Source of the DNA: Rebecca billardiae RCC1528
Lineage: Eukaryota; Protista; Haptophyta
Length of the DNA stretch: 64,000 nucleotides
Direction: 5' to 3'
Assembly: GCA_965240325.2 (NCBI GenBank)
Contig: OZ251235.1
Coordinates: forward strand, 1,860,001-1,924,000
Positions within the stretch are counted from its first letter, which is position 1. Each line of letters opens with the position of its first letter. The notes under the pieces were generated by a model, which was not told where the DNA came from, searched no databases, and was given only the letters and a program-made list of their open reading frames with translations. This document shows positions 619 through 16,424 of this stretch, piece by piece. The position numbers and the translations under genes are program-made.

Positions 619-917
619 GTCAGTCAGAGCATTGAGCCTGAGGCCCTGAGGCCAGGCGCGGAGTGAGGCGCGTGCACCACAATCCATGAGTGCTGACTGA
701 GTCATGATGCCAGACCGTTGAGTCCGCGCATCGTCAAGCCACGCCGTCGTCACAAATACACAATGTCGTCAATGTACGTCGACCAGCAGGTTAAAAAAAG
801 GCGGCGCCGAAAACAATTAATCGGCTCAGGCGCAAGGACTCCCCCAGCCCGGCCGGTCGCTCGTCGTTGCAAAGCTGCGACTGAGTACCGCCCTTGACCC
901 GCGCCCACCTCGTGGCC

Positions 918-2657
918 ATGCCCGGCGCCGACGCCGATGCGGTGGCGCGCCTGCGCGAGCGAGTGGACGCGGGCGATGTGGACGCCTGCTTCGAGCTGGG
1001 GGTACACCACGTCGATGCGGTCGCTGAGCCCGCGGACCTCGCCCAGGGCGCGGTCCTCCTGCGCGCGGCCGCGGAGAACGGGCATGTGGGCGCGCAGGTG
1101 CGGCTCGGCGAGTGCCTCGAGCTCGGCCGGGGCGTGAACCAGGATTGCGAGGAGGCGGCGCGCTGGTACCTGCGCGCCGCGAAGCACGGCCACGCGCCGG
1201 CGCAGCACGCCGTCGGACTCCTCTTCCAGGCGGGGAAAGGCGTCGAGCCGTCGGCGGCCAAGGCCGCGCGCTATTTCCGCGCGGCCGCGGACAAAGGGCA
1301 CTCCGACGCGTGCTGCCGGCTGGCGCGGCTGTACGAGCTGGGCCTCGGGGTCGAGCGGGATCTGAGCGAATCGCTCTACTGGGACCGCCGCGCGGCCGGC
1401 GAGCCTGGCCTCGGGCCGCCGCGCAAGCCAGCACCGCTCAGCCCGGCTTCGAGCGGTCTCTCGCGCCGCGGCTCGGCGCAATCGCCGAGCGGTCTGTCGC
1501 GCGGCGGCTCGGCGCACGATGGCGCGCCCAGACCCGCTGCCGCCGCGGCGGGCGGCGCCAAGCCCGTGCCGCGCCGCCCCTTGTCCGAGCCGCGCAGCCC
1601 AAACGCCCCGCCCGAGCCGCGCAGCCCCAACTCGCTGCGCGCCGCAGCAGAGGCGGGCGATGCTGACGCCATGTTCGCTCTGGGGACGATGCTGCAGGAG
1701 GGCGCGCCGCTGCCGGCGGACGAGCGCGCCGCCGCGGAGCTGTACACGCGCGCGGCGGCGCTCGGCCACGCGCGCGCCCTGTACAACCTCGGCGTGCTGC
1801 ACAACACGGGCGCGGGCGTCGAGGCGTCGCACGCCAAGGCCGTCCGGTGCTTCCGCGGCGCGGCGGAGGCCGGGCTGGCGGAGGCGCAGCACGCGCTCGC
1901 GCTGTGCTACGACGTGGGGCGCGGGGTGGAGCAGGACGACGCGGAGACGGTGCGCTGGCTCCTCGCGGCCGCGCAGCAGGGGCTGCCCCTCGCCGAGCTG
2001 GCGATGGGCGTGTGCTACGACTCCGGCCGGCGAGTCTCCCAGGACCATTCGGAGGCGGTGCGCTGGTTCCGCCGCGCGGCAGCGCAGGGCATACCGCAGG
2101 CGCAGCTCGCGCTCGGCATGCACCTGAGCGACGGCTCGGGCGTGCGGCGGGACCGCGCGGAGGCGATGCGCTGCTTCGAGGCCGCCGCGGCGCAGGGCCT
2201 CGCGGAGGCCCACTGCGCGCTCGGCTTGCACTACGCGTCGGGCGCGGCCACAGGGCGGCCGGAGCACGCACGCGCTCTGCGCCACTATCGGCTGGCCGCG
2301 CAAGAGGGTCAGCGGATGGCGCAGTACAACCTAGGCGCGCTGCTGCTCGATGGCGTGGGCGTGCCGCGCGACGCGTCGGCCGCGGCGTGGTGGCTCGGCG
2401 AGGCGGCAAAGCAGGGCGACGCGGACGCGCTCACCACCCTCGCTCAGTGCGCGTCCGATCGAGCCGTCGTGTCCGCGTGCTGCATCGGCTGCGGCGCGAC
2501 CTCCGAGCTGGAGCCGTGCTCCCGGTGCGGCGTCGCGCGCTTCTGCTCAGGCGAGTGCCGCCAGCGCATGCGCGCCGTGCACAGAGACAGCTGCCTCGCG
2601 TGGAGCGGGGGGCAGCGCCGGCGCTCGTCGTCGTCGCCGTCGGCAACATTGATGTGA
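918..2657 (+). CDS. Sel1-like repeat protein with C-terminal MYND-type zinc finger (~579 aa)
   Basis: Many SLR motifs (AQVRLGECLELGRGVNQDCEEAARWYLRAA, ALYNLGVLHNTGAGV, AQYNLGALLLDGVGVPRD) and a terminal CIGC..CSRC...FCSGEC...HRDSC. ATG at 918. Confidence 0.9.
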   Translation: MPGADADAVARLRERVDAGDVDACFELGVHHVDAVAEPADLAQGAVLLRAAAENGHVGAQVRLGECLELGRGVNQDCEEAARWYLRAAKHGHAPAQHAVGLLFQAGKGVEPSAAKAARYFRAAADKGHSDACCRLARLYELGLGVERDLSESLYWDRRAAGEPGLGPPRKPAPLSPASSGLSRRGSAQSPSGLSRGGSAHDGAPRPAAAAAGGAKPVPRRPLSEPRSPNAPPEPRSPNSLRAAAEAGDADAMFALGTMLQEGAPLPADERAAAELYTRAAALGHARALYNLGVLHNTGAGVEASHAKAVRCFRGAAEAGLAEAQHALALCYDVGRGVEQDDAETVRWLLAAAQQGLPLAELAMGVCYDSGRRVSQDHSEAVRWFRRAAAQGIPQAQLALGMHLSDGSGVRRDRAEAMRCFEAAAAQGLAEAHCALGLHYASGAATGRPEHARALRHYRLAAQEGQRMAQYNLGALLLDGVGVPRDASAAAWWLGEAAKQGDADALTTLAQCASDRAVVSACCIGCGATSELEPCSRCGVARFCSGECRQRMRAVHRDSCLAWSGGQRRRSSSSPSATLM

Positions 2658-5312: not shown

Positions 5313-5479
5313 TATGCAGCAGAGTCGCGTCCGACCCCCGATTGATGACTTGAAGGAGTGGCGCAGCCGCAGCGGAAGGGAAGCCATGGCGGGCGTGAAT
5401 GCCCGTCCCACCGCGATCCAAGGCGCGAGTGCAACGTCCGGGACAGGGGGGCGTTGCACTCGCCGGTCGGCGTCGCCGT

Positions 5480-5940
5480 ACGAGCGCGTGTGCGTGAGTG
5501 ATGGCTTCCCTTCCGACTTTTCGACCACTCTCACGTCCACGTCCCCGCCCCCGTACAACCGGCGCGCCGGCCAGTGAGGTTGCGCATGGGAAGGATGGCC
5601 GGGCAGGTAGCGGCCAGGATCACCGTTCTGACGGTCATACTGCCCTCCGGGGCATGCATTGCGACGGTGCATGCCTGGCGATGGTCGATCTGGCCCTACA
5701 AGCCGTGGATCTGACGAGCAAGGTTGGCTGCGCGGCCAGTCGTGCGAATACGTTTGGGCTTTGGCTGATGCGTGTGCGCAGCGCCTGTCAACGGCAGGGT
5801 GATCAACGACCGGCATGGCTAGCAAGCTGATCAGGACTAGTAACAACCTTGTCTAGGACCACGCCACGCCATTTGGCGACCTCGCCACCGCTCAATGCCC
5901 GTCCAGAGGCACGGCCGTGCCGCACTACCTGGCCAGCCCG
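5480..5940. repeat. Degenerate dispersed repeat, direct copy A (partner ~9070-9475)
   Basis: Collinear shared blocks with 9070-9475, e.g. GCTTCCCTTCC.ACTTTTCGACCAC.CTCACGTCC, GGATCAC..TTCTGACGGTCAT and CCTCGCCACCGCTC.ATGCCCGTCCAGAGGCAC..CGTGCCGCACTACCTGGCCAGCCC. Confidence 0.75.
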
Positions 5941-6030
5941 TCCGCCAAACGGTGCCGGGAGGCCCTGACCATGACCATCTGGACCGCCCCCTTAGAGTTA
6001 GAAATAGCTCTGAGATCGAGGGCGAACGAT

Positions 6031-8575
6031 TCATTTTTGGCCTTGGGATGATGAGAACGTCGGCGATGGTGTGGCGCGCGCGTCCCCATCACGCAGCGCA
6101 GCTGGGCGCGAGCACATGAACGGCAGCTCGCGCTTGCACGGCCACCACGTGGCCCAGCCTCCCGACATGAGCATGCCGCACTCGTACCCGTCGATGCCGC
6201 GGGGCTGCGCCGGCAGCCATCGACTTGCGGCCGCCGGGTCGGACACGCCGCCCCCCGGCGCCGCCACGCCATCCGCCCAGGACCACGCCTGCTCATCGGA
6301 AGGGTGCCCGTCATGCACCGCGGTGTGGAGCGACAAGCCGATCCAGCCGATGGGCGCGGCGTGGCCCAGCAGGCAGTTTGCGACGCGCCATGCCTCTGGC
6401 TCGCGCACGACGGCGAGCGTCGCGCCCTCGGCCGCGCACGCGCGCTGCGCATCGGCGAAGCTCCCGATGCACGCGGGCATGGCGAGCTCCAGCCCGCCTG
6501 CGCGCACCCACGTGCCCGCGGCCGGGCGTCCGCCGGGCGCAAAGCACTGCGCGCACGCCTCCCGCGCCGGCCGACCGCCCACGCGGATCAGCGCAAGCGC
6601 GGGCACGACTGCGCACGCGGCCACGAGCAGCCACGGCAGCAGCCATCGGCACGTGTGGGCGAGCCCGCCGCGACCGGGTGCTTCGAGCTCGCCGGTCAAG
6701 ACGGAGAACCGGCGCGCGTAGTTGCCCGAGGGGCGCCTGCGCCCACCGCTGCCTGCCCGCGACGCGGGCTTGCGCGCGCCCAGAGGCTTGGGCGCACGCG
6801 CGGTGCCCGGCGCACCCTCGCTCGGCGCGGGCACGGGCGGCAGCAGCTGCAGCACCAGCCTGTTGAAGCTCTCGGTCTCGCCGAAGCTTGCCTCGATCAC
6901 CGCCATCAGCCGGTCGTAGTCGCTCTGCTCCGTCGCGGTGCAGTCCGTCACGTCGAAGCAGCTGATCGCGTCGTGCACTTGGCTCTCAAACCCCGGGAGC
7001 ACGCGCAGCTGAGGGTGGCGCGTGCCCATCTGCGAGTGCGTGAAGATCTCGAAGACGCACCACAGCCGGCTGAGCAGCGTCGGCCCGCAGAGCACGACCA
7101 TCTCGTTCGAGCCCGCGATCACGACCGGCAGGATCGCCAGGTCGGCCGCGATGTTGCTCTGGTCGATGCACGCCCGGTCGATCCACAGCAGCGGCTTGCG
7201 GTGGTGCCGCCGTTGGAACTCGGCGCACCAGCGCCGCAGCTCCCGCCACTTGGCCATCGCGTCGTCGTGCCACTGCGGCGCCCGCGGCCGCGCGCGCGGG
7301 CGTGGCAGGTCGCGGGGCCGGAGGTGGTGAGCGGGCATCGCGCGCCGCGCCAAGGCCAGCGGCACGTTGCGCTGCCACGCGTCCGGCGGGCGCGCGCCGC
7401 GCGCGCACCGAGTGCGAGACGAATGCGTCGATGGCGTAAAGTGGCGCGGGCTCGGACAGCCGGTACCAGCGGTCGTCGTCCGCCTTGCTGTCCGCGGCCG
7501 CGGCTTCCTCGTCGGCGGCGCCGCTGTGCGCGACCGTGGGGGTGGGGCGGATGAATATGTCCGCCGTGAGCAACTCGGAGCGGACGGCGCGGAGCCGGGA
7601 GACCGCCGTTGCGATGAGCTCGTCAGGGCTGCCCGCCTCAGCGACGAGCGACGCTATGCCAGCTGCTGCGCTCACGCCCTCGCCGCGAGCGCCGAGCCAT
7701 CCCTGCACGCGCCGCTGCAGCGGCGCGTCCCAGCACACGTATGCGGCGCCGCTCGACTCGAAGAAGAACGCGATGGTCGACAGCGCGTCGAACGAGCGCA
7801 GGTACCCCGGCAGCACCGCCGCCTGCACGAGCACGTACCACAGCAGGCTGAGTGCCAGCACCAAGTTGGAGATGCACAGGTCGAGCCAGAGCCGGCGCAG
7901 CATGTACCGGCCGTGCAGCGCGCGGTGCGCGCGCCACATGCTCCACCGCTCGGACGCGAGCGCCGCGCCGACGCGCAGCGAGTAGAGCGCCACCGCGAAC
8001 GCGCACTGCAGGTAGAACGGCACCATCACGTCGAGCGTATACGCCGAGTTGCACGTCGCCGCGTCAGGAGCGGTCGCCGTGAGGTAGAGCTCGATGGCCG
8101 TGCCGGCAAACTCGAGGGCCATGAAGGCGTAGCCAACGACCATGGCGACGCCGGTACCGAGGAGCAGGGAACGGTCCGTCGGGAGCAGCACGAGCAGCCA
8201 GAAGGGCGCGAACAAGAACATGAGGTAGCCGCCCACAAGGAAGGGCCGAGTGTCCGGCGGATAGAGCGTGAGAAGCACGACGGTGGACGTGAGCATCACG
8301 ACCGCGACGATCCCTGGCGGGCCCGAGATGGCGAGCCGGCGCATGCGGCCGGCACGGCGCGAGCTGGCGAGGCTCGAGGCGATGTCGCTCGGCACCGCCG
8401 CGCTCGCAACGCTCGAGCTCGAGGTATCGCTTGCGTGCGATTGCAGCGGCTCGTCGACCTCTCCTTTGCTCTCGAGCGCAGACAGGACGTGCTGATGGAA
8501 GGGCGCGCCGCCCGCGTCGCGCATGCGATGGGATGGAGCCCGCCGCCGCCCACCGCAGATGAACGCGCGCAGCAT
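6031..8575 (-). CDS. Multi-pass membrane protein: ~6 TM + TIR/HET-like domain + TM + C-type lectin domain; exons 8575-7409 and 7272-6031 (~802 aa)
   Basis: Splicing the GT-AG intron 7408-7273 joins DAFVSHS|WHDD. It is followed by LWIDRACIDQ and GPTLLSRLWCVFE. The C-terminus has CTLD motifs SFADAQRAC..GATLAVV..WIGL..WSWADG..W...QP..EC..W...C...PFMC. Start codon uncertain. Confidence 0.82.
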
Positions 8576-9069
8576 AGCGTGATGCGCACCCGCGAAGACA
8601 CACCGCACGTGTGGAGAGGAAAGGGGGCCCCGGCTGGATTCTGGAAGCAGCAATCTTGATGGTTGGTGAGGACTGACGACGACGCTGACAAAGGCGAGTG
8701 AGATCACAAGATCGCCCACGCGCACTTTATAAATCGTGCGGGTACAAGTGGTATGCACAGCTGTACCGTGATGCAGATCACAATTCTGACGCTCCATTTT
8801 CAGCCTGTAGCCTGCGGGTACTGATTGATCACCAGCGAGAATCCCGATGGGATGATGAGACACATAAACCAATATACTGATCCAATGCAATTACGAGAAT
8901 GCTATGATCTCGGCGTTCATCTGGTTAAGTGACGGTACGTGCGGGTAGGCTTTAGCCCCCCGGCCACCGCCACCCTGTGGCGGGGTACTCTCGTCCCCAC
9001 CGCGGGTCCAAGGCCCCATCGCCACGGCCGGGTCACAAGGGGGTGGCATAGGCAGGTTGGCGCGGTCGT

Positions 9070-9475
9070 ACGAGCGCGTGAGCGTGAGCGACAGCTTCCC
9101 TTCCTACTTTTCGACCACCCTCACGTCCGCGTCCACGTCCTCGTGCGACCGGCGCCGCGGCGCGGCGCCGCGCGCGCGGCGCGCTGGGCTGCGCATGGAC
9201 GAAAGGATGGGCAGGTAGGTAGGGGGTCAGGATCACTCTTCTGACGGTCATGCCGACCTCTTTGGCATGCCTTGCGACGGTGCAGGCAGCAGGCCTATCA
9301 ATGCTCCGTCTGCCCCCCCACACGCCTTGAGTCTGATGATCAATGTTGGCTGTGCGGTAGTCGTACGTGCCTGTCAATCAAAAGGATGACCGCTCGCCAC
9401 GCGGTTTGGTGCCCTCGCCACCGCTCGATGCCCGTCCAGAGGCACAGACGTGCCGCACTACCTGGCCAGCCACTG
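9070..9475. repeat. Degenerate dispersed repeat, direct copy B (partner ~5480-5940)
   Basis: See copy A. The two copies flank the lectin-TIR-like gene. Confidence 0.75.
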
Positions 9476-9797: not shown

Positions 9798-10195
9798 CCG
9801 GCTGACGGCGCAGGAGGGCCAGCGGATGGCGCAGTACAGCCTAGCGCGCTGCTGCTCGACGGCGTGGGCGTGCCGTGCGTCGCGTCGGCCGCGGTGTGGT
9901 GGTTCGGCGAGGCGGCAAAGCAGGGCGACGCGGACACGCTCGCCGCTCGCCACCCTCGCACAGTGCGCGTCCGATCGAGCCGTCGTGTCCGCGTGCTGCA
10001 TCGGCTGCGGCGCGACCTCCGAGCGAGCTGGAGCAGTGCTCCCGGTGCGGCGTCGCGCGCTTCTGCTCAGGCGAGTGCCGCCAGCGCATGCGCGCCGTGC
10101 ACAGAGACAGCTGCCTCGCGTGGAGCGGGGGGGCATCGCCGGCGCTTGTCGTCGTCGTCGGCAGCTGGCAGCATTGATGAGCACGGCTGAGAGTA
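9798..10195 (+). pseudogene. Frameshifted duplicate of the 3' end of the Sel1-MYND gene (copy of ~2288-2685)
   Basis: Near-identical DNA to ~2290-2650 (AQEGQRMAQY..., AVVSACCIGCGATSE, CSRCGVARFCSGECRQRMRAVHRDSCLAW) but split across frames by indels. Confidence 0.88.
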
Positions 10196-10199
10196 ATAA

Positions 10200-12119
10200 A
10201 TGACCGCGTTCCGCGGTCCTTTTTCGTAGAACCAACGCAGTTGGGGGCCCGCGGCGCAGTGGTTGAGAATGAGACCGTGACGTCGTCAATCCGCACGGTC
10301 TGGCGTCTGCCTGGCAGTCAGACAGGCCGAGCCGCACCGTCTCGGAGAGTGAGTGAGAGTCAGACCCGTCCGTCGGACTCGCGGCGCGTGAATGGGCGCG
10401 CCGACGGCCAAGGGTGGCACGGGACACCAGCGGACGGGCCGCGCGGGGAAGCGGGGCGGCGCGCGCGCAGGGCGAGAGGCGCGGACGGGCCGCGCGGGGA
10501 AGCGGGGCGGCGCGCGTGCAGGGCGAGAGGCGCCGCGCGGCGCGGGCCGGCGCGTGCGCGCGCGCGCGCGCACCTGCTTGAGGTGCTCGCGCTGCGCCAT
10601 GCGCTCGACGAAGGGCCGCTGGTCGCTCAGCCGGCGCGCCTCGGGCCGGCATAGCGAGAGCGCGCGCCACTGCTGCCCGCCCACGCTGCGCAGCCACGCG
10701 CAGACCGAGCGGAGCTCGGGGTGGGACGAAGAGAGTGGCGTGTCGCGCCCGCCGCCAGGCGCACGCGTGCCCTGCTCCGCACCGCGCCGCCGTGCTCGCC
10801 CGCCGCCTGCTCCGCCGCGTCGGCCTCGAGGATGGCGGCGGCCAGCGGCAGGCTGAGCGGCGCGCGCTCGCCCACCGTCGCTTCGAGGGCCGTCCACACC
10901 TGCTCGAGCTGCTGCAGGGCGTGGACAAGGGCAGCGCGCGCGCCCAGCGCATCCGTGCCGCGTGACGCAGCGCGTCGAGCTCGGCGCCTCGCTTCGCCAG
11001 CTCGGCGCCCAGCGCCTTCACGCGCACGTGCTCGTGTATCTGCGCGCGCACGGCCTGCGCGCCGCCGCCCATCTGCGCGCGCAGACTCGGACTCGTCGCG
11101 GCTGGCTGCTAGGGAGTGCTAGGGTGCGCGCCGCGTAGTCGATGGCCAAGGCCTGCAGCCAGCGCGCCTGCACCGAGAAAAGAAGGCGCGGCACGCGCGC
11201 TATAACCCAGTCCACGCAGACACGCGAGCGCGTGCTCGAGCGGCGCGCCGGGGCAACCGTCCACGTCGGCCGCGCGGGAGCCGCAGGTACTCTCGCGTGC
11301 CTGCGCGACGCAGCGCGCACGCACAGCGAAACGGGCGCGGGGTAGAATTCAGGAGAGCGCCGCCGCCCGCGCACCACCCCACCGAGAGTGCGCACATGCG
11401 CACGCCACGACATGGCACGACATGGCGCACGAGTCGGACGCAACGCCCGACAGACAGAAGCCTTCGACAATCCGCGCGCGCCCGCAAACGCGGCCGCGCG
11501 CGCGGGCGGGCGCGCGGGCGTGCGTGCGCCACCCGCGCGGGAGGCGCCCGCGGCCGCGCGGGCGGCGCGCGCGCGGCGCGCGCTCCGCGCGGTCGTCCAC
11601 ACCGATGGCGGTCGATCGAGGGCGACGAGGGCTCGCCCCGTTTTTGGAGCGAGCGCGTGCCGCGCGCCCCCTGGCCCCCAACTGGGTATGATAATACCCA
11701 CAATTACCCAAAATGACCTTATGCCCCCATTACCGTTAGCGAGCCAATGTACTGATATGATAGACTGAACGAGAGTACCCACAATTCAAGTTTCCCGATC
11801 CCTTGCCTTGCCGTTTTTATCGGTTGGCGGTTGGCGGCAATCTCATACTTAAAATCGCGCTCGAAACGAACCGTTACACTAATGTCACGTCCAGCTGACG
11901 TCCAGATCGCACTTTACTTAAGGGAATCAGCTGGGCGCGCTTTTTTTCGGCCTAATAGACCTCTCTATGCGATCTCAAAAACTCGAAACTCGGTCTCCGC
12001 CAGCCCTAAAAATCGCCCCCCGTCCCTTTTTTCTTGATCAAAGATCTTTTTGAAACGTGGTTCGGGCCCGCTGGTGCGGGCTCCACGCTGCGCGCTCCGC
12101 CCTGCACCGCGGGCCATAA
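10200..12119 (-). mobile_element. Non-autonomous Helentron/Helitron2-like element, copy E2 (same family as E1, inverted)
   Basis: Minus strand reads TTATGGCCCGCGGTGCAG...CTGCGCCGCGGGCC-CCCAACTGCGTTGGTTCTACGAAAAAG-GACCGCG-GAA-CGCGGTC-AT. It interrupts the duplicated Sel1 downstream sequence with no evident TSD. Confidence 0.75.
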
Positions 12120-12120
12120 C

Positions 12121-12240
12121 ACTCAGACTGCCCGGGCAACGCGTCGCAGCACTGCCAATCCGCAATCGGCGGCCGACGCGAACGGGCCGAACGGCCAGCA
12201 ACAGGCCGCCCGGCCTCGGCCCCGGGGCTGCAAGCTGCGG
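12121..12240 (+). repeat. Continuation of the Sel1-locus duplication (copy of ~2695-2800) beyond E2
   Basis: TCAGACTGCCCGGGCAACGCGTCGCAGCACT...ATCGGCGGCCGACGCGAACGG..CCAGCAAC.GGCCGCCCGGCCT matches 2696-2775. Confidence 0.85.
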
Positions 12241-14558: not shown

Positions 14559-15812
14559 TCAGCTCCCGCCGCCGCCGCCGCACAGCTCGAAGAAGTCGTC
14601 CGGGTGCGCCAGGATCCACGTGTGCGCGCTCGGCCCCTCCGGCTGCGACGCGTCTGGCTCGGCGCCGTCTGTGGCGGCCGGGGCCGCCGGGGCGGCGGGA
14701 GGGATGGCGCAGGCGCTGAGCGCGAGATTGCCCTGCGCGCTCGGCAGGTCGACCGAGTAGACCGGGTACCCCGCCTGCTGCACGCCCAGCCCGATCTCCT
14801 CGATCGACTTGCCCTCCGCCTGCAGCCGCTCCGCGACGGCCAGCGGGCCGTGTGCCAGGCTGCACGTCTGCGCGACGTAGTCACCAGCGTCGCGCACGCC
14901 CGAGCACCAGCCGTGCTTGGTGAACTCGTGCGCGGCGAGGTGTGAGTCGGGGTAGCACCACGACCACGCGCGCGGCAGCCCGTCCCACGCCATGTCCTCC
15001 GGCTGCTCGCACACCGCGTCGCCGTACACGCCCACCTGCGGCCAGAGCCCATGCACGCGCGGCGGCGCTCCCAGCGAGATGGTGAGGACGCCGCAGAGCG
15101 CGGCGCCTCGGCAGGACATGCGCTTCGGCGGCGTGCTCGACGGGACGTGCGGGACGGGGGGCGCCAGTGCGCCCGGCCCGCACAGCAGCGAGAAGTCCAC
15201 CTCGCGCGCCAGCATCCACACGTACCCCGAGTCTGTCGTCTTGGCGGCGCAGGCGGACAGCGTGAGCCATGGCTGCGCTCGGGCGAGGCCGAGCACAGGC
15301 GCGCCCGAGCTGGCGACCGCGCGGGTGGCGGCGATCGGATCGCCGCCGCGCTCGCGGATGAGCTTGGCGACGCGCATCGGCCCGTGCGCAAGGCCGCACA
15401 GCTGCTCGCTGAACGCCCGGTGGGTGGCCGTCCCAGCGCATTCGCCATCTGCTTGCCAGAGCTCCGCAGCGCGCGCCTGCGGCATGCACGTGGGCTGATA
15501 GTCGGGCTCGGGCGTCGGGTCGAGCGGGCCGATGCATGAGCCTTCCGCGTTGAGCGCCAGGCCGATCAGCTCCGGGGCCGACGTCGTCAGGTCGATCGTG
15601 AGCCTGCCGCAGAGCGGCGCATCGCCGCAGTCCAGCCGCAAGTGGTTGGCGTCCTCGGAGGCGCGCAGGAGCATCCAGCCGCCGAAGCTGAGCGCGTGCA
15701 CGCATGCGCTGATAAGCATGGCGGCCGCGAGGCCGCCGAGCACGGCGCGCCACGGCAGCGCCGCCCGCTTCGCTCGCGCGAGCTGCACGCGCGCGTCGCC
15801 GTAGCTGATCAT
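14559..15812 (-). CDS. Ribonuclease T2-family protein with N-terminal TM anchor and tandem (degenerate + intact) domains
   Basis: CAS-I VHGLWP and CAS-II HEFTKHGWC lie in the second domain. Internal repeat LCGRLTI...QLCGLAHGPM..LTLSACA vs LCGVLTI...QTCSLAHGPL..LALSACA. Start could be further upstream (ORF open to 16037). Confidence 0.82.
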   Translation of the reverse strand: MISYGDARVQLARAKRAALPWRAVLGGLAAAMLISACVHALSFGGWMLLRASEDANHLRLDCGDAPLCGRLTIDLTTSAPELIGLALNAEGSCIGPLDPTPEPDYQPTCMPQARAAELWQADGECAGTATHRAFSEQLCGLAHGPMRVAKLIRERGGDPIAATRAVASSGAPVLGLARAQPWLTLSACAAKTTDSGYVWMLAREVDFSLLCGPGALAPPVPHVPSSTPPKRMSCRGAALCGVLTISLGAPPRVHGLWPQVGVYGDAVCEQPEDMAWDGLPRAWSWCYPDSHLAAHEFTKHGWCSGVRDAGDYVAQTCSLAHGPLAVAERLQAEGKSIEEIGLGVQQAGYPVYSVDLPSAQGNLALSACAIPPAAPAAPAATDGAEPDASQPEGPSAHTWILAHPDDFFELCGGGGGS

Positions 15813-16424
15813 TGCCAGCTTTGATGCAGGACGTGCGCCGTCCAGCGCGACTGCCGATGATTGGCCGGCAGCTCGGTGGTCGTTCCACCGTTCCACGGCG
15901 TCTTTCACGACACCCAAACTGACGAGACCCAAACTTCGTCGTCGAAAACTCGAAGGGTCATCGTTCTTCGCTCTTGACGTCAGCCATGGCCGGGGCCGTG
16001 CCTTCCACGTCATCTGTCGTCGTACTCGTAGTCTCATCAGAGATCAGTCTGCAGGGTCGGTCAGCAGCCCTAGCGGCTCGGGTCGTCAGGCACGCAGGCG
16101 GACGCCTCACTGCCTCTGCGGATATACACATTACGCGGTGGCTCGGAGCCAATCTGTCCGATGGAGGCGGCCCACGCCCGCCAGCGGTCAGGCCACTTGA
16201 CTTAGTCGGGCCGGCCGAGCCGCGAGACTCGCCGACTTGCGACCTTGCGGTCCGGCCGCGCGCCAGAGGCCCAGAATGCCAACGGTGAGTGAGAGGCTCA
16301 GGCTCAGCGGCCGAGGCGCGACCCGTCGCACTCGTCGCAGCCGACTCGGCATGAGTGCATTGATTGCGACAGCGTGCCTGGCGCGTGACCTGATCCGGCT
16401 GATCACATGCGGCATGCGGGCTGC

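What the first reader, a model, noticed from the sequence alone, without database searches (positions are those of the whole stretch)
6031..8575. Receptor-like fusion: 6TM + cytosolic TIR/HET-like domain + TM + extracellular C-type lectin
Seen: after splicing one 136-nt intron the protein has ~6 hydrophobic helices, a domain with FVSHSWHDD / LWIDRACIDQ / SRLWCVFE motifs, a seventh helix (WLLPWLLVAACAVVPALALI) and a complete C-type lectin domain. Known: FxSHxW...WxD..CI.Q...RxWCxxE is the TIR/HET-like pattern, whose Glu is the catalytic residue of TIR NADases, and CTLDs bind glycans. Inference: the helix count puts the TIR-like domain inside the cell and the lectin outside. That would be a single-chain glycan-sensing receptor with reversed (effector-before-sensor) topology relative to Toll-like receptors, and a candidate algal innate-immunity or prey/virus-recognition system. 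I do not know of this architecture being characterised.
Basis: partly seen in the sequence, partly recalled or inferred. Interest (0 to 1): 0.8.

Follow-up and report, generated by a model that had tools for sequence, protein, structure and literature searches.

The report
Algal membrane TIR/HET protein with lectin
This is an intact two-exon gene of a very GC-rich, haptophyte-type alga that joins six membrane helices, an internal immune/cell-death-type (TIR/HET) domain, a seventh helix and an external C-type lectin fold, so it looks like a surface receptor of a large, barely studied algal family, but its lectin lacks the usual sugar-binding residues and no activity, ligand or transcript has been shown.

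Summary
On the minus strand, exon 1 (8575-7409) and exon 2 (7272-6034, stop 6033-6031) are split by a 136-nt GT..AG intron. Uninterrupted homologues read SHSWHDD across the junction.

Six membrane helices are conserved across 72 relatives and appear in an AlphaFold model. The middle domain belongs to a family of at least 1,960 cluster representatives. A 48%-identical relative folds at pLDDT 93.9, and its best solved-structure matches are all TIR domains. The Glu of WCVFE is 99% conserved and aligns with the catalytic Glu of a plant TIR.

Pfam Lectin_C passes its cutoff. However, the calcium/sugar motifs EPN and WND read QPR and WAT, so glycan sensing is not supported.

Charge distribution, conserved lectin cysteines and relatives with N-terminal LRR or lectin ectodomains all put the TIR/HET domain inside and the lectin outside.

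The same architecture occurs in other haptophyte proteins. This scan already found it on at least five other pieces of this genome. A 2025 paper reports virus-responsive multi-helix TIR genes in Gephyrocapsa huxleyi, and a fungal HET-plus-lectin-fold protein is characterised.

No RNA run was listed. The joined protein was never searched or folded.

Verdict: a real gene and an uncharacterised variant of TIR/HET receptors, with its function only inferred.

The parts
7409..8575 (-). Exon 1 (389 codons): disordered basic/Ser-rich N-terminus, six membrane helices, conserved juxtamembrane linker, and the first strand of the TIR/HET-like domain
   Evidence: Translation. GC3 rises at about 8575. It aligns over nearly its full length to P0142 (E 7e-16) and P0008 (E 3e-12).
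7730..8326 (-). Six-helix membrane module. Helices lie at about residues 84-105, 111-131, 136-160, 186-212, 229-252 and 263-282 of exon 1.
   Evidence: Six hydropathy peaks averaged over 72 relatives. AlphaFold helices 61-104, 110-129, 135-168, 181-219, 222-254 and 262-282. No convincing solved-structure match: Foldseek E >= 0.2, best VIA Z 7.6. Only haptophyte clusters match in the ESM Atlas.
7445..7729 (-). Cytosolic juxtamembrane linker with the family-conserved AAAGIA and RFR-type motifs. It carries a lineage-specific acidic insert at about residues 351-368.
   Evidence: Nearly invariant A304, A308 and A324 in alignment A2. Alignment occupancy falls to 0.02-0.15 at residues 351-370.
7273..7408 (-). 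Intron, 136 nt, GT..AG. It splits the SHS|WHDD motif.
   Evidence: Sequence. The codon-position GC pattern is lost here. Uninterrupted homologues span the junction.
6823..7444 (-). TIR/HET-like domain. The first strand, PLYAIDAFVSHS, is in exon 1; the rest is exon-2 residues 1-150. The range includes the intron.
   Evidence: 1,960 representative hits, almost all to exon-2 residues 1-145. It keeps 31 of 36 exon-2 positions conserved at >=85%, and the five conserved first-strand positions are readable in exon 1. The relative's model has pLDDT 93.9 and all its top matches are TIR domains.
7048..7050 (-). GAG codon for the Glu of WCVFE (exon-2 residue 75), the candidate catalytic Glu
   Evidence: Glu in 99% of 137 family domains. 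The family profile aligns RLWCvlEl to WCLNEL of the SNC1 TIR domain (E 0.15). W-x3-E spacing is read directly.
6646..6822 (-). Low-complexity Ala/Pro/Arg/Gly-rich cytosolic linker (exon-2 residues 151-209)
   Evidence: Translation. GC3 0.86. It is rich in Arg/Lys ahead of helix 7, in this protein and in P0142, P0008 and P0002.
6586..6645 (-). Seventh membrane helix (exon-2 residues 210-229)
   Evidence: Hydropathy peak of 2.49. Coordinates. Equivalent helices occur in P0142, P0008 and P0002.
6088..6561 (-). C-type lectin-like domain (exon-2 residues 238-395). It has a CxxC lead-in, WIGLS, WSWADG and the canonical cysteines. QPR (6207-6199) stands in place of EPN/QPD, and WAT in place of WND.
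   Evidence: Pfam Lectin_C 29 bits, above 22.6. DC-SIGN alignment. Conserved cysteines and motifs in alignment A3. Coordinates.
6031..6087 (-). Short C-terminal tail (18 residues) and TGA stop (6033-6031)

Best explanation
This is an intact nuclear gene for a seven-helix membrane protein of about 802 residues (389 + 413). It belongs to a large, mainly haptophyte family whose conserved core is a six-helix membrane module followed by a cytosolic HET-type member of the TIR fold.

This copy adds a seventh helix and an extracytosolic C-type-lectin-like domain.

Shown:
- the gene model;
- the family and the recurrence of this architecture;
- the TIR fold, on a 48%-identical relative;
- conservation of the TIR-type Glu;
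- six conserved helices;
- a bona fide lectin fold that lacks the canonical calcium/sugar site.

Inferred:
- Both ends of the six-helix core face the cytosol, so the TIR/HET domain is inside and the lectin is outside the cell or in a lumen.
- Binding of a still unknown ligand, not necessarily a glycan, to the lectin fold changes the packing or clustering of the receptor.
- That switches on the TIR/HET domain, either as an NAD+-cleaving signal-producing enzyme using the WCxxE Glu or as a self-associating cell-death/defence domain.

In effect it would be an effector-before-sensor counterpart of a Toll-like receptor.
For: Gene model:
-.
- The junction is corroborated by uninterrupted homologues.

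Family size:
- 1,960 representatives at E <= 1e-3 and 1,252 at E <= 1e-10.

Same architecture elsewhere:
- P0142 is a single 722-aa ORF on an 8.9-kb contig; P0008 and P0002 share the architecture.
- One ESM Atlas haptophyte cluster of 116 members carries Lectin_C in 22% of members.

TIR/HET nature:
- Per-member Pfam hits at E <= 0.01 are TIR_2 51/137, HET 21/137 and TIR 3/137.
- The profile's best PDB matches are the SNC1, SIGIRR and TLR TIR domains, at the WCxxE helix.
- The model has pLDDT 93.9.
- The Foldseek top 50 are all TIR domains.
- The top 12 matches in the VIA-align wide PDB search are all TIR domains, Z 8.9-7.4.
- Glu is 99% conserved, and this copy keeps 31 of 36 conserved positions.

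Topology:
- Six conserved hydropathy peaks, with Lys/Arg enrichment before helix 1, in the 4-5 loop and after helix 6.
- The AlphaFold model agrees.
- P0123 (signal peptide + LRR) and P0043 (N-terminal lectin-like) carry one extra helix before the six-helix core.
- The lectin cysteines are conserved.

Precedents:
- The Podospora BH protein has a HET domain plus a lectin fold that sets recognition specificity (PMC10890737).
- Virus-responsive multi-helix TIR genes occur in G. huxleyi (PMC12489294).
Against: - No transcript evidence: no RNA run was listed.
- The window's own domain passes neither the Pfam TIR nor the HET threshold (HET 15.2 bits against 22.5).
- The fold test was made on a relative, not on the joined window protein.
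- Foldseek E-values are weak (about 5e-3) and Z values of about 8-9 are only just above the tool's stated background.
- The Glu alignment to SNC1 has E 0.15.
- No enzymatic activity had been established for any HET domain as of the 2023 review (PMC10197012).
- The lectin lacks the canonical sugar site.
- Arg residues directly after helix 7 weaken the positive-inside argument for this copy taken alone.
- The membrane in which the protein sits is unknown.
- Most family members have no ectodomain at all, so the core may act without any external sensor.
Confidence: 0.6

Rival explanations
1. The architecture is the same, but the TIR/HET domain is not an enzyme. It acts as a homotypic interaction or cell-death scaffold, as proposed for fungal HET domains and as in animal Toll-like receptor TIR domains. 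It would recruit other HET/TIR proteins of the same large family.
For: - The WIDxxCIxQ block is a HET hallmark rather than a TIR hallmark.
- HET activity was still unestablished in 2023 (PMC10197012).
- Dyrka et al. proposed adaptor-type action (PMC4986451).
- The best structural match is the MyD88 TIR domain, an adaptor.
Against: - The 99% conserved Glu, with an invariant Trp four residues earlier, matches the W-x3-E arrangement of TIR NADases. The NADase comparison rests on my own knowledge of SARM1, RUN1 and AbTir.
- An adaptor role would not by itself explain that conservation.
Confidence: 0.22
2. It is not a non-self sensor. The lectin-like domain would anchor the protein to the alga's own surface material or to a partner cell, for adhesion, scale or cell-covering assembly, or mating or self-recognition. 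Alternatively the protein sits in an internal membrane with the lectin in the lumen. The six-helix core would then do the main job, for example as a channel or membrane effector.
For: - The canonical sugar site is lost.
- Most family members have the six-helix-plus-TIR/HET core without any ectodomain.
- The six-helix fold is unknown.
- Fungal HET proteins act in self/non-self recognition between conspecifics (PMC10890737).
Against: - Relatives swap in LRR and lectin ectodomains at either end while keeping the parity of helices. That is the pattern expected of a diversifying receptor repertoire.
- Multi-helix TIR genes of G. huxleyi respond early to virus (PMC12489294).
Confidence: 0.13
3. It is a silent or decaying copy. 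The locus would be one paralogue carried or duplicated by the repeat-bounded segment around it, and not expressed.
For: - About 540-nt direct repeats flank the gene (5410-5945 and 8999-9471).
- Near-identical repeats and inverted repeats bound a roughly 9.4-kb segment.
- Another reader called this region Helitron-like (s1-371977).
- No RNA run was listed.
- The domain has a long terminal branch in the family tree.
Against: - Both exons are open, with a strong coding GC3 signal throughout.
- The splice sites are canonical.
- 31 of 36 conserved domain positions, the Glu, and all canonical lectin cysteines are kept.
Confidence: 0.05

Closest known systems
Podospora anserina BH (het-B): HET domain plus C-terminal lectin-fold domain (PMC10890737)
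   Same: A HET/TIR-like cell-death domain comes first and a lectin-fold recognition domain comes last. There the lectin fold determines specificity and recognises a protein, which fits a lectin fold without a sugar site.
   Different: BH is described there with only those two domains, HET and lectin fold, and its partner is a PII-like protein. Here the protein has a six-helix membrane module and a seventh helix that puts a C-type lectin fold on the other side of the membrane. Sequence similarity to Pfam HET is below threshold.
Gephyrocapsa huxleyi TIR-domain genes with N-terminal multiple membrane helices or an extracellular region (PMC12489294)
   Same: Haptophyte membrane proteins with a predicted intracellular TIR domain and a conserved Glu. 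They are proposed there as receptor-like and are expressed early after virus addition.
   Different: That paper defines them by Pfam TIR families and does not describe a C-terminal helix plus C-type lectin. I could not check whether any of its 15 genes belongs to this family, because no supplement is held.
TIR-domain NAD+-cleaving enzymes (plant SNC1, RUN1 and RPP1; SARM1; bacterial ThsB, AbTir and SPARTA)
   Same: The fold matches. The Glu is aligned to the plant TIR catalytic Glu, with a Trp four residues earlier.
   Different: Sequence identity is 10-20%. Pfam TIR thresholds are not met. The WIDxxCIxQ block is HET-like. No activity is known.
Toll-like receptors
   Same: An external recognition domain is coupled across the membrane to a cytosolic TIR-fold domain. 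The relative P0123 even has an N-terminal LRR ectodomain.
   Different: Seven helices instead of one, the effector before the sensor, and a lectin fold instead of LRR. The TIR domain is of the HET type.
Animal C-type lectin-like receptors (DC-SIGN; CD69-type NK receptors)
   Same: The Lectin_C fold with WIGL, WxWxDG and the canonical cysteines. DC-SIGN and CD69 are the best PDB sequence matches.
   Different: The EPN/WND calcium and sugar ligands of DC-SIGN are replaced. In this respect it resembles the non-sugar-binding lectin-like receptors (my own knowledge). The cytosolic part is unrelated.
[quoted passage not shown] 2019, cited in PMC12489294)
   Same: TIR plus lectin in one chain, with a defence role.
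   Different: Known to me only from that paper's title. It has a different lectin type, as I recall, and I did not examine it here.

Membership tests
C-type lectin domain (Pfam PF00059 Lectin_C) | Profile score above the curated cutoff | tested here: met
   29.0 bits against 22.6, over exon-2 residues 271-388
C-type lectin domain (Pfam PF00059 Lectin_C) | WIGL motif, WxWxDG motif and the four canonical cysteines | tested here: met
   WIGLS, WSWADG and conserved cysteines in alignment A3 with P0142, P0008, P0002 and P0043
Calcium-dependent carbohydrate-binding C-type lectins | EPN or QPD motif plus WND motif and the Glu before the second cysteine (five calcium-site ligands) | tested here: not met
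   Aligned to DC-SIGN, EPN reads QPR, the Glu reads Tyr and WND reads WAT. The alignment itself is weak (17.8 bits), but the landmarks agree with direct reading.
TIR domain (Pfam PF13676 TIR_2 / PF01582 TIR) | Profile score above the curated cutoff | tested here: not met
   No TIR hit for exon 2, which lacks the first strand. The score for P0003, the closest full-domain relative scanned, is 26.9 bits against 28. 51 of 137 members hit TIR_2 at E <= 0.01.
TIR domain (fold level) | Flavodoxin-like TIR fold | tested here: met
   Tested on P0003:300-486, which is 45-48% identical to the window's domain. pLDDT 93.9. The Foldseek top 50 are all TIR domains, E from 4.6e-3. The VIA top 12 are all TIR domains, Z 8.9-7.4. 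The window's own joined domain was not folded.
TIR NAD+-cleaving enzymes | Catalytic Glu in the helix after the third strand | tested here: inconclusive
   Glu is present and 99% conserved. It aligns with the Glu of WCLNEL in SNC1, but only at E 0.15. No residue-level structural superposition was available.
TIR NAD+-cleaving enzymes | NAD+ hydrolase or cyclase activity | not testable with these tools
   Needs a biochemical assay
HET domain (Pfam PF06985) | Profile score above the curated cutoff | tested here: not met
   15.2 bits against 22.5, covering only the WIDxxCIDQ block. 21 of 137 relatives hit at E <= 0.01.
HET domain (Pfam PF06985) | Three conserved blocks (xxSHxW-type, WIDxxCIxQ, RxWxxxE) | tested here: met
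   Read directly and in the family consensus. The block definition is from Dyrka et al. (PMC4986451), which also lists haptophyte HET homologues.
Toll-like receptor | N-terminal LRR ectodomain, single helix, C-terminal TIR | tested here: not met
   No LRR; seven helices; the lectin is C-terminal

The most novel reading that the evidence does not exclude
The six-helix-plus-TIR/HET unit is the core of a modular pattern-recognition receptor repertoire of haptophyte algae. Ectodomains are plugged onto either end through one extra helix: a C-type lectin fold at the C-terminus, or LRR or lectin at the N-terminus. Ligand binding, for example of giant-virus or bacterial surface molecules, switches on a membrane-tethered TIR-type NAD+-consuming enzyme. 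The enzyme then signals defence or cell death, possibly through the six-helix module itself acting as a channel. That would be an independent invention of Toll-like signalling in a major phytoplankton lineage.
Probability: 0.25. Interest if true: 0.85.

Novelty: new variant of a known kind. Interest (0 to 1): 0.55.

Why it matters
Haptophytes drive ocean carbon and sulphur cycles, and their blooms are ended by giant viruses. How these cells sense viruses, bacteria or grazers is largely unknown.

This family is large. It tethers a TIR/HET-type domain with a conserved catalytic-type Glu to the membrane and couples it to swappable ectodomains. That makes it a concrete, testable candidate for algal surface immunity or regulated cell death.

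It would also extend the link between TIR domains and fungal HET domains to a third eukaryotic lineage.

This locus adds one intact paralogue with a clean gene model. It also adds a caution: its lectin fold probably does not bind sugars in the classical way.

Tried and rejected
- Word-index protein search with exon 2 found nothing. With residues 1-150 it found one hit. The index was probably swamped by low-complexity words, because the exhaustive HMMER search found 1,960.
- NCBIfam gave nothing meaningful.
- The sequencing-run search listed no RNA run, so read laying could not be used and the intron has no read support.
- No supplement of PMC12489294 is held.
- The bacterial promoter/terminator scan is irrelevant to a eukaryote.
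- The six-helix module has no convincing solved-structure relative. Foldseek's best hits are class-B GPCRs at E 0.2 and TM 0.2. The best VIA Z is 7.6, including cytochrome b561-type six-helix proteins at 7.4-7.5. That is within the tool's stated background for helical bundles, so I reject these as leads.
- The family tree of the TIR/HET domain was a quick search only; the careful search did not finish. It leaves the window's copy on a long branch and unresolved. The copy does not fall with the P0142/P0008/P0002 lectin-bearing group. Whether the lectin was fused once or several times therefore stays open.
- Ten further long relatives carry no Pfam domain.
- Two separate genes instead of one spliced gene: rejected, because 72 relatives carry the membrane module and the domain in one ORF and exon 2 lacks the first strand.
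- An upstream in-frame ATG at 8797: rejected as the start, because GC3 there is about 0.5.
- No second copy of the gene lies in this window.
Full report
**Observation**

The gene lies on the minus strand. The ATG is at 8575. Exon 1 runs 8575-7409 (389 codons) and ends ...AIDAFVSHS. A 136-nt intron (7408-7273) begins GTGCGC and ends CCGCAG. Exon 2 runs 7272-6034 (413 codons), begins WHDD..., and is followed by TGA at 6033-6031.

GC at the third codon position is about 0.5 upstream of 8620. It rises to 0.8-1.0 from about 8575 onward. It is 0.96 in the TIR-like part, 0.86 in the linker and 0.85 in the lectin part. The intron loses the pattern, and the value falls to 0.51 after the stop. Both exons, including the linker and the lectin, therefore carry the coding signature of this genome. 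The 8575 start is preferred over an upstream in-frame ATG at 8797.

No second copy of the gene lies in the window.

**Rule followed**

Every search and fold used exon 1 or exon 2 by reference, or used natural uninterrupted relatives. The joined step is left out and listed under referred steps.

**Splice junction and single-gene status**

No RNA run was listed for this stretch, so there is no read evidence. The support comes from homology.

- An exhaustive HMMER search with exon 2 found 1,960 cluster representatives at E <= 1e-3 and 1,252 at E <= 1e-10.
- Relatives encoded without interruption read DAFVSHSWHDDG (P0043), DAFVCHSWHDPP (P0008) and DAFLSHSWHDNP (P0002) exactly across the junction.
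- Exon 1 aligns over nearly its whole length to the N-terminal parts of P0142 (E 7e-16) and P0008 (E 3e-12), ending at their xDAFxCHS.
- P0142 (722 aa), P0008 (854 aa) and the N-terminally truncated P0002 all continue into a helix and a Pfam Lectin_C domain.
- P0142 is one uninterrupted ORF on an 8.9-kb metagenome contig.
- P0008 and P0002 come from one JGI sample, on contigs of 2-3 kb that each hold only the one called gene. This would fit transcript assemblies, but I could not verify it.

The whole architecture therefore exists on single ORFs elsewhere.

**The middle domain**

I aligned 137 domain sequences (A1). The consensus is ...CDAFxSHSWHDD...WxDKxCIDQ...GPTYLSRLWCIxELF... W54, D56, L72, G87, R93, W95 and C96 are invariant, and E99 is present in 99%. 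The window's copy keeps 31 of the 36 exon-2 positions conserved at >=85%. The five conserved first-strand positions are readable at the end of exon 1.

Pfam does not formally claim the domain:

- Exon 2 gives only HET at 15.2 bits, against a cutoff of 22.5.
- Among the 137 members scanned singly, 51 hit TIR_2, 21 hit HET and 3 hit TIR at E <= 0.01. P0003, the closest full-domain relative, scores 26.9 bits against a cutoff of 28.

The family profile's best solved-structure sequence matches are all TIR domains (SNC1, SIGIRR, TLR15/2) at E 0.15-0.4. The profile segment lvvlaGptylsRLWCvlEl is laid on IVIFSKNYASSTWCLNEL of SNC1. From my own knowledge, that Glu is the catalytic Glu of plant TIR enzymes, and the Trp four residues before it is also shared with SARM1 and AbTir.

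An AlphaFold model of the closest full-domain relative (P0003:300-486, 45-48% identical to the window) has pLDDT 93.9 and pTM 0.88.

- In Foldseek against the PDB, all 50 best matches are TIR domains. They include SNC1, RPP1, SPARTA, AbTir, TLR15, ThsB, RUN1, L6, Roq1, SARM1 and MyD88. The E-values are modest, from 4.6e-3.
- In the Foldseek-independent VIA search of 48,161 chains, the top 12 are all TIR domains: MyD88 Z 8.9, SpbK 8.5, IL-1RAcPb 8.5, SARM1 8.4, ThsB 8.3 and RPP1 8.2. They are followed by the related nucleoside deoxyribosyltransferase-type folds.

Each line of evidence is weak to moderate, but all point the same way. The domain is a HET-type branch of the TIR fold.

This matches Dyrka et al. 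2014. They related HET to TIR and noted HET homologues in Haptophyceae, including an Emiliania sequence (PMC4986451). ESM Atlas neighbours of the window's domain are all haptophyte-dominated clusters. One is automatically named 'Heterokaryon incompatibility domain-containing protein'.

**Membrane module and topology**

Hydropathy averaged over 72 relatives and mapped on exon 1 shows six peaks, at about residues 86-103, 114-130, 140-158, 195-212, 232-250 and 266-282. Lys/Arg is enriched before helix 1, in the 4-5 loop and after helix 6. The AlphaFold model of exon 1 (pLDDT 76.8, above 90 for most helices) has six long helices at the same places. It also has a further conserved juxtamembrane helix carrying the AAAGIA motif.

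Both ends of the core are therefore predicted to face the cytosol, which places the TIR/HET domain inside. Helix 7 (exon-2 residues 210-229) then takes the lectin to the other side.

Three further points agree:

- The linker before helix 7 is Arg/Lys-rich here and in P0142, P0008 and P0002.
- The lectin has a full set of conserved cysteines, expected to be disulphide-bonded in an oxidising compartment.
- P0123 has a signal-peptide-like start and Pfam LRR repeats. P0043 has a sub-threshold N-terminal Lectin_C. Both carry one extra helix before the six-helix core, so in these too the ectodomain and the TIR/HET domain fall on opposite sides.

One weak point is that three Arg residues follow helix 7 in this copy. 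Which membrane the protein occupies is not known.

The six-helix fold has no convincing solved relative. In the ESM Atlas it matches only haptophyte clusters. One of these has 116 members, of which 22% carry Lectin_C.

**The lectin**

Pfam Lectin_C passes its cutoff. WIGLS, WSWADG and the canonical cysteines are conserved with the relatives.

In the alignment to DC-SIGN, however, EPN reads QPR, the Glu two residues before the cysteine reads Tyr, and WND reads WAT (landmarks checked). Four of the five classical calcium/sugar ligands are thus missing. P0142 and P0008 also lack them, and P0002 keeps EPN only.

'Glycan-sensing' is therefore not supported for this copy. It is a C-type-lectin-like fold whose ligand could be a protein or something else. 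The same is true of the lectin fold of Podospora BH, which recognises a PII-like protein (PMC10890737).

**How it most likely works (inferred)**

A ligand binds the external lectin-like domain. This changes receptor packing or clustering. The cytosolic TIR/HET domains then associate and either cleave NAD+ to make a signal or deplete it, or nucleate a death or defence complex.

No enzymatic activity had been established for any HET domain as of a 2023 review (PMC10197012), so the enzymatic step is a hypothesis. Most family members have no ectodomain, so the six-helix-plus-TIR/HET core must be able to work alone. The ectodomain is an add-on.

**What is known**

I found no paper on this architecture. 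The nearest are:

- a 2025 study of Gephyrocapsa huxleyi reporting virus-responsive TIR genes with multiple N-terminal helices or an extracellular region (PMC12489294);
- the fungal HET-plus-lectin-fold protein BH.

This scan has already reported the same architecture on at least five other pieces of this genome (s1-371892, s1-363212, s1-357897, s1-371939, s1-360747). My tests on this locus agree with those follow-ups.

**Surroundings**

Two copies of a roughly 540-nt element flank the gene as direct repeats (5410-5945 and 8999-9471, 71-91% identical). There are no further copies in the window. Near-identical repeats at 2504-2612/10024-10132, 2696-2774/12123-12216 and 2867-2994/11978-12103 (inverted) bound a larger rearranged segment. 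Another reader called that segment Helitron-like. I did not resolve this. It may bear on how the family multiplies.

**Verdict**

The receptor-like topology and the TIR/HET fold are supported. The glycan claim is not supported, and the function is unproven. It is an uncharacterised variant of TIR/HET-domain receptors and one of several paralogues in this genome.

Noticed in passing
window 5410-5945 and 8999-9471: Two copies of a roughly 540-nt element flank the gene as direct repeats, 71-91% identical. One lies about 90 nt past the stop and the other about 420 nt upstream of the ATG. There are no other copies in the 64-kb window.
   Followed up: partly
window 2504-2612 / 10024-10132; 2696-2774 / 12123-12216; 2867-2994 / 11978-12103: Near-identical (97-99%) direct and inverted repeats bound a roughly 9.4-kb segment that contains the gene. 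This suggests a recent duplication or rearrangement, or a mobile element. Another reader called the region Helitron-like.
   Followed up: no
window 885-2654 (+) and 9875-10177 (+): A Sel1-repeat protein with a C-terminal MYND zinc finger (Sel1 E 2.7e-75). A 99%-identical 109-nt copy of its MYND-coding end sits at 10024-10132, apparently as a detached fragment.
   Followed up: partly
window 14562-16043 (-): A high-GC3 open frame of 494 codons with a weak, sub-threshold Ribonuclease T2 match (19.9 bits against 26).
   Followed up: no
P0001 (1110 aa, ENA contig): A relative holds two complete six-helix-plus-TIR/HET units in tandem in one protein.
   Followed up: no
P0123 (954 aa) and P0043 (873 aa): Relatives with the ectodomain at the N-terminus: LRR repeats with a signal-peptide-like start, or a sub-threshold C-type lectin. 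One extra helix precedes the six-helix core.
   Followed up: partly
window 8795-8797 (-): An upstream in-frame ATG with no intervening stop would add 74 residues. GC3 of about 0.5 argues that it is untranslated leader.
   Followed up: yes
ESM Atlas neighbour of exon-2 residues 1-160: The nearest cluster with a Pfam family is a haptophyte heme-NO-binding (H-NOX) protein of 774 aa, at a low score of 0.76. This echoes the H-NOX-TIR/HET fusion reported elsewhere in this genome by the scan.
   Followed up: no
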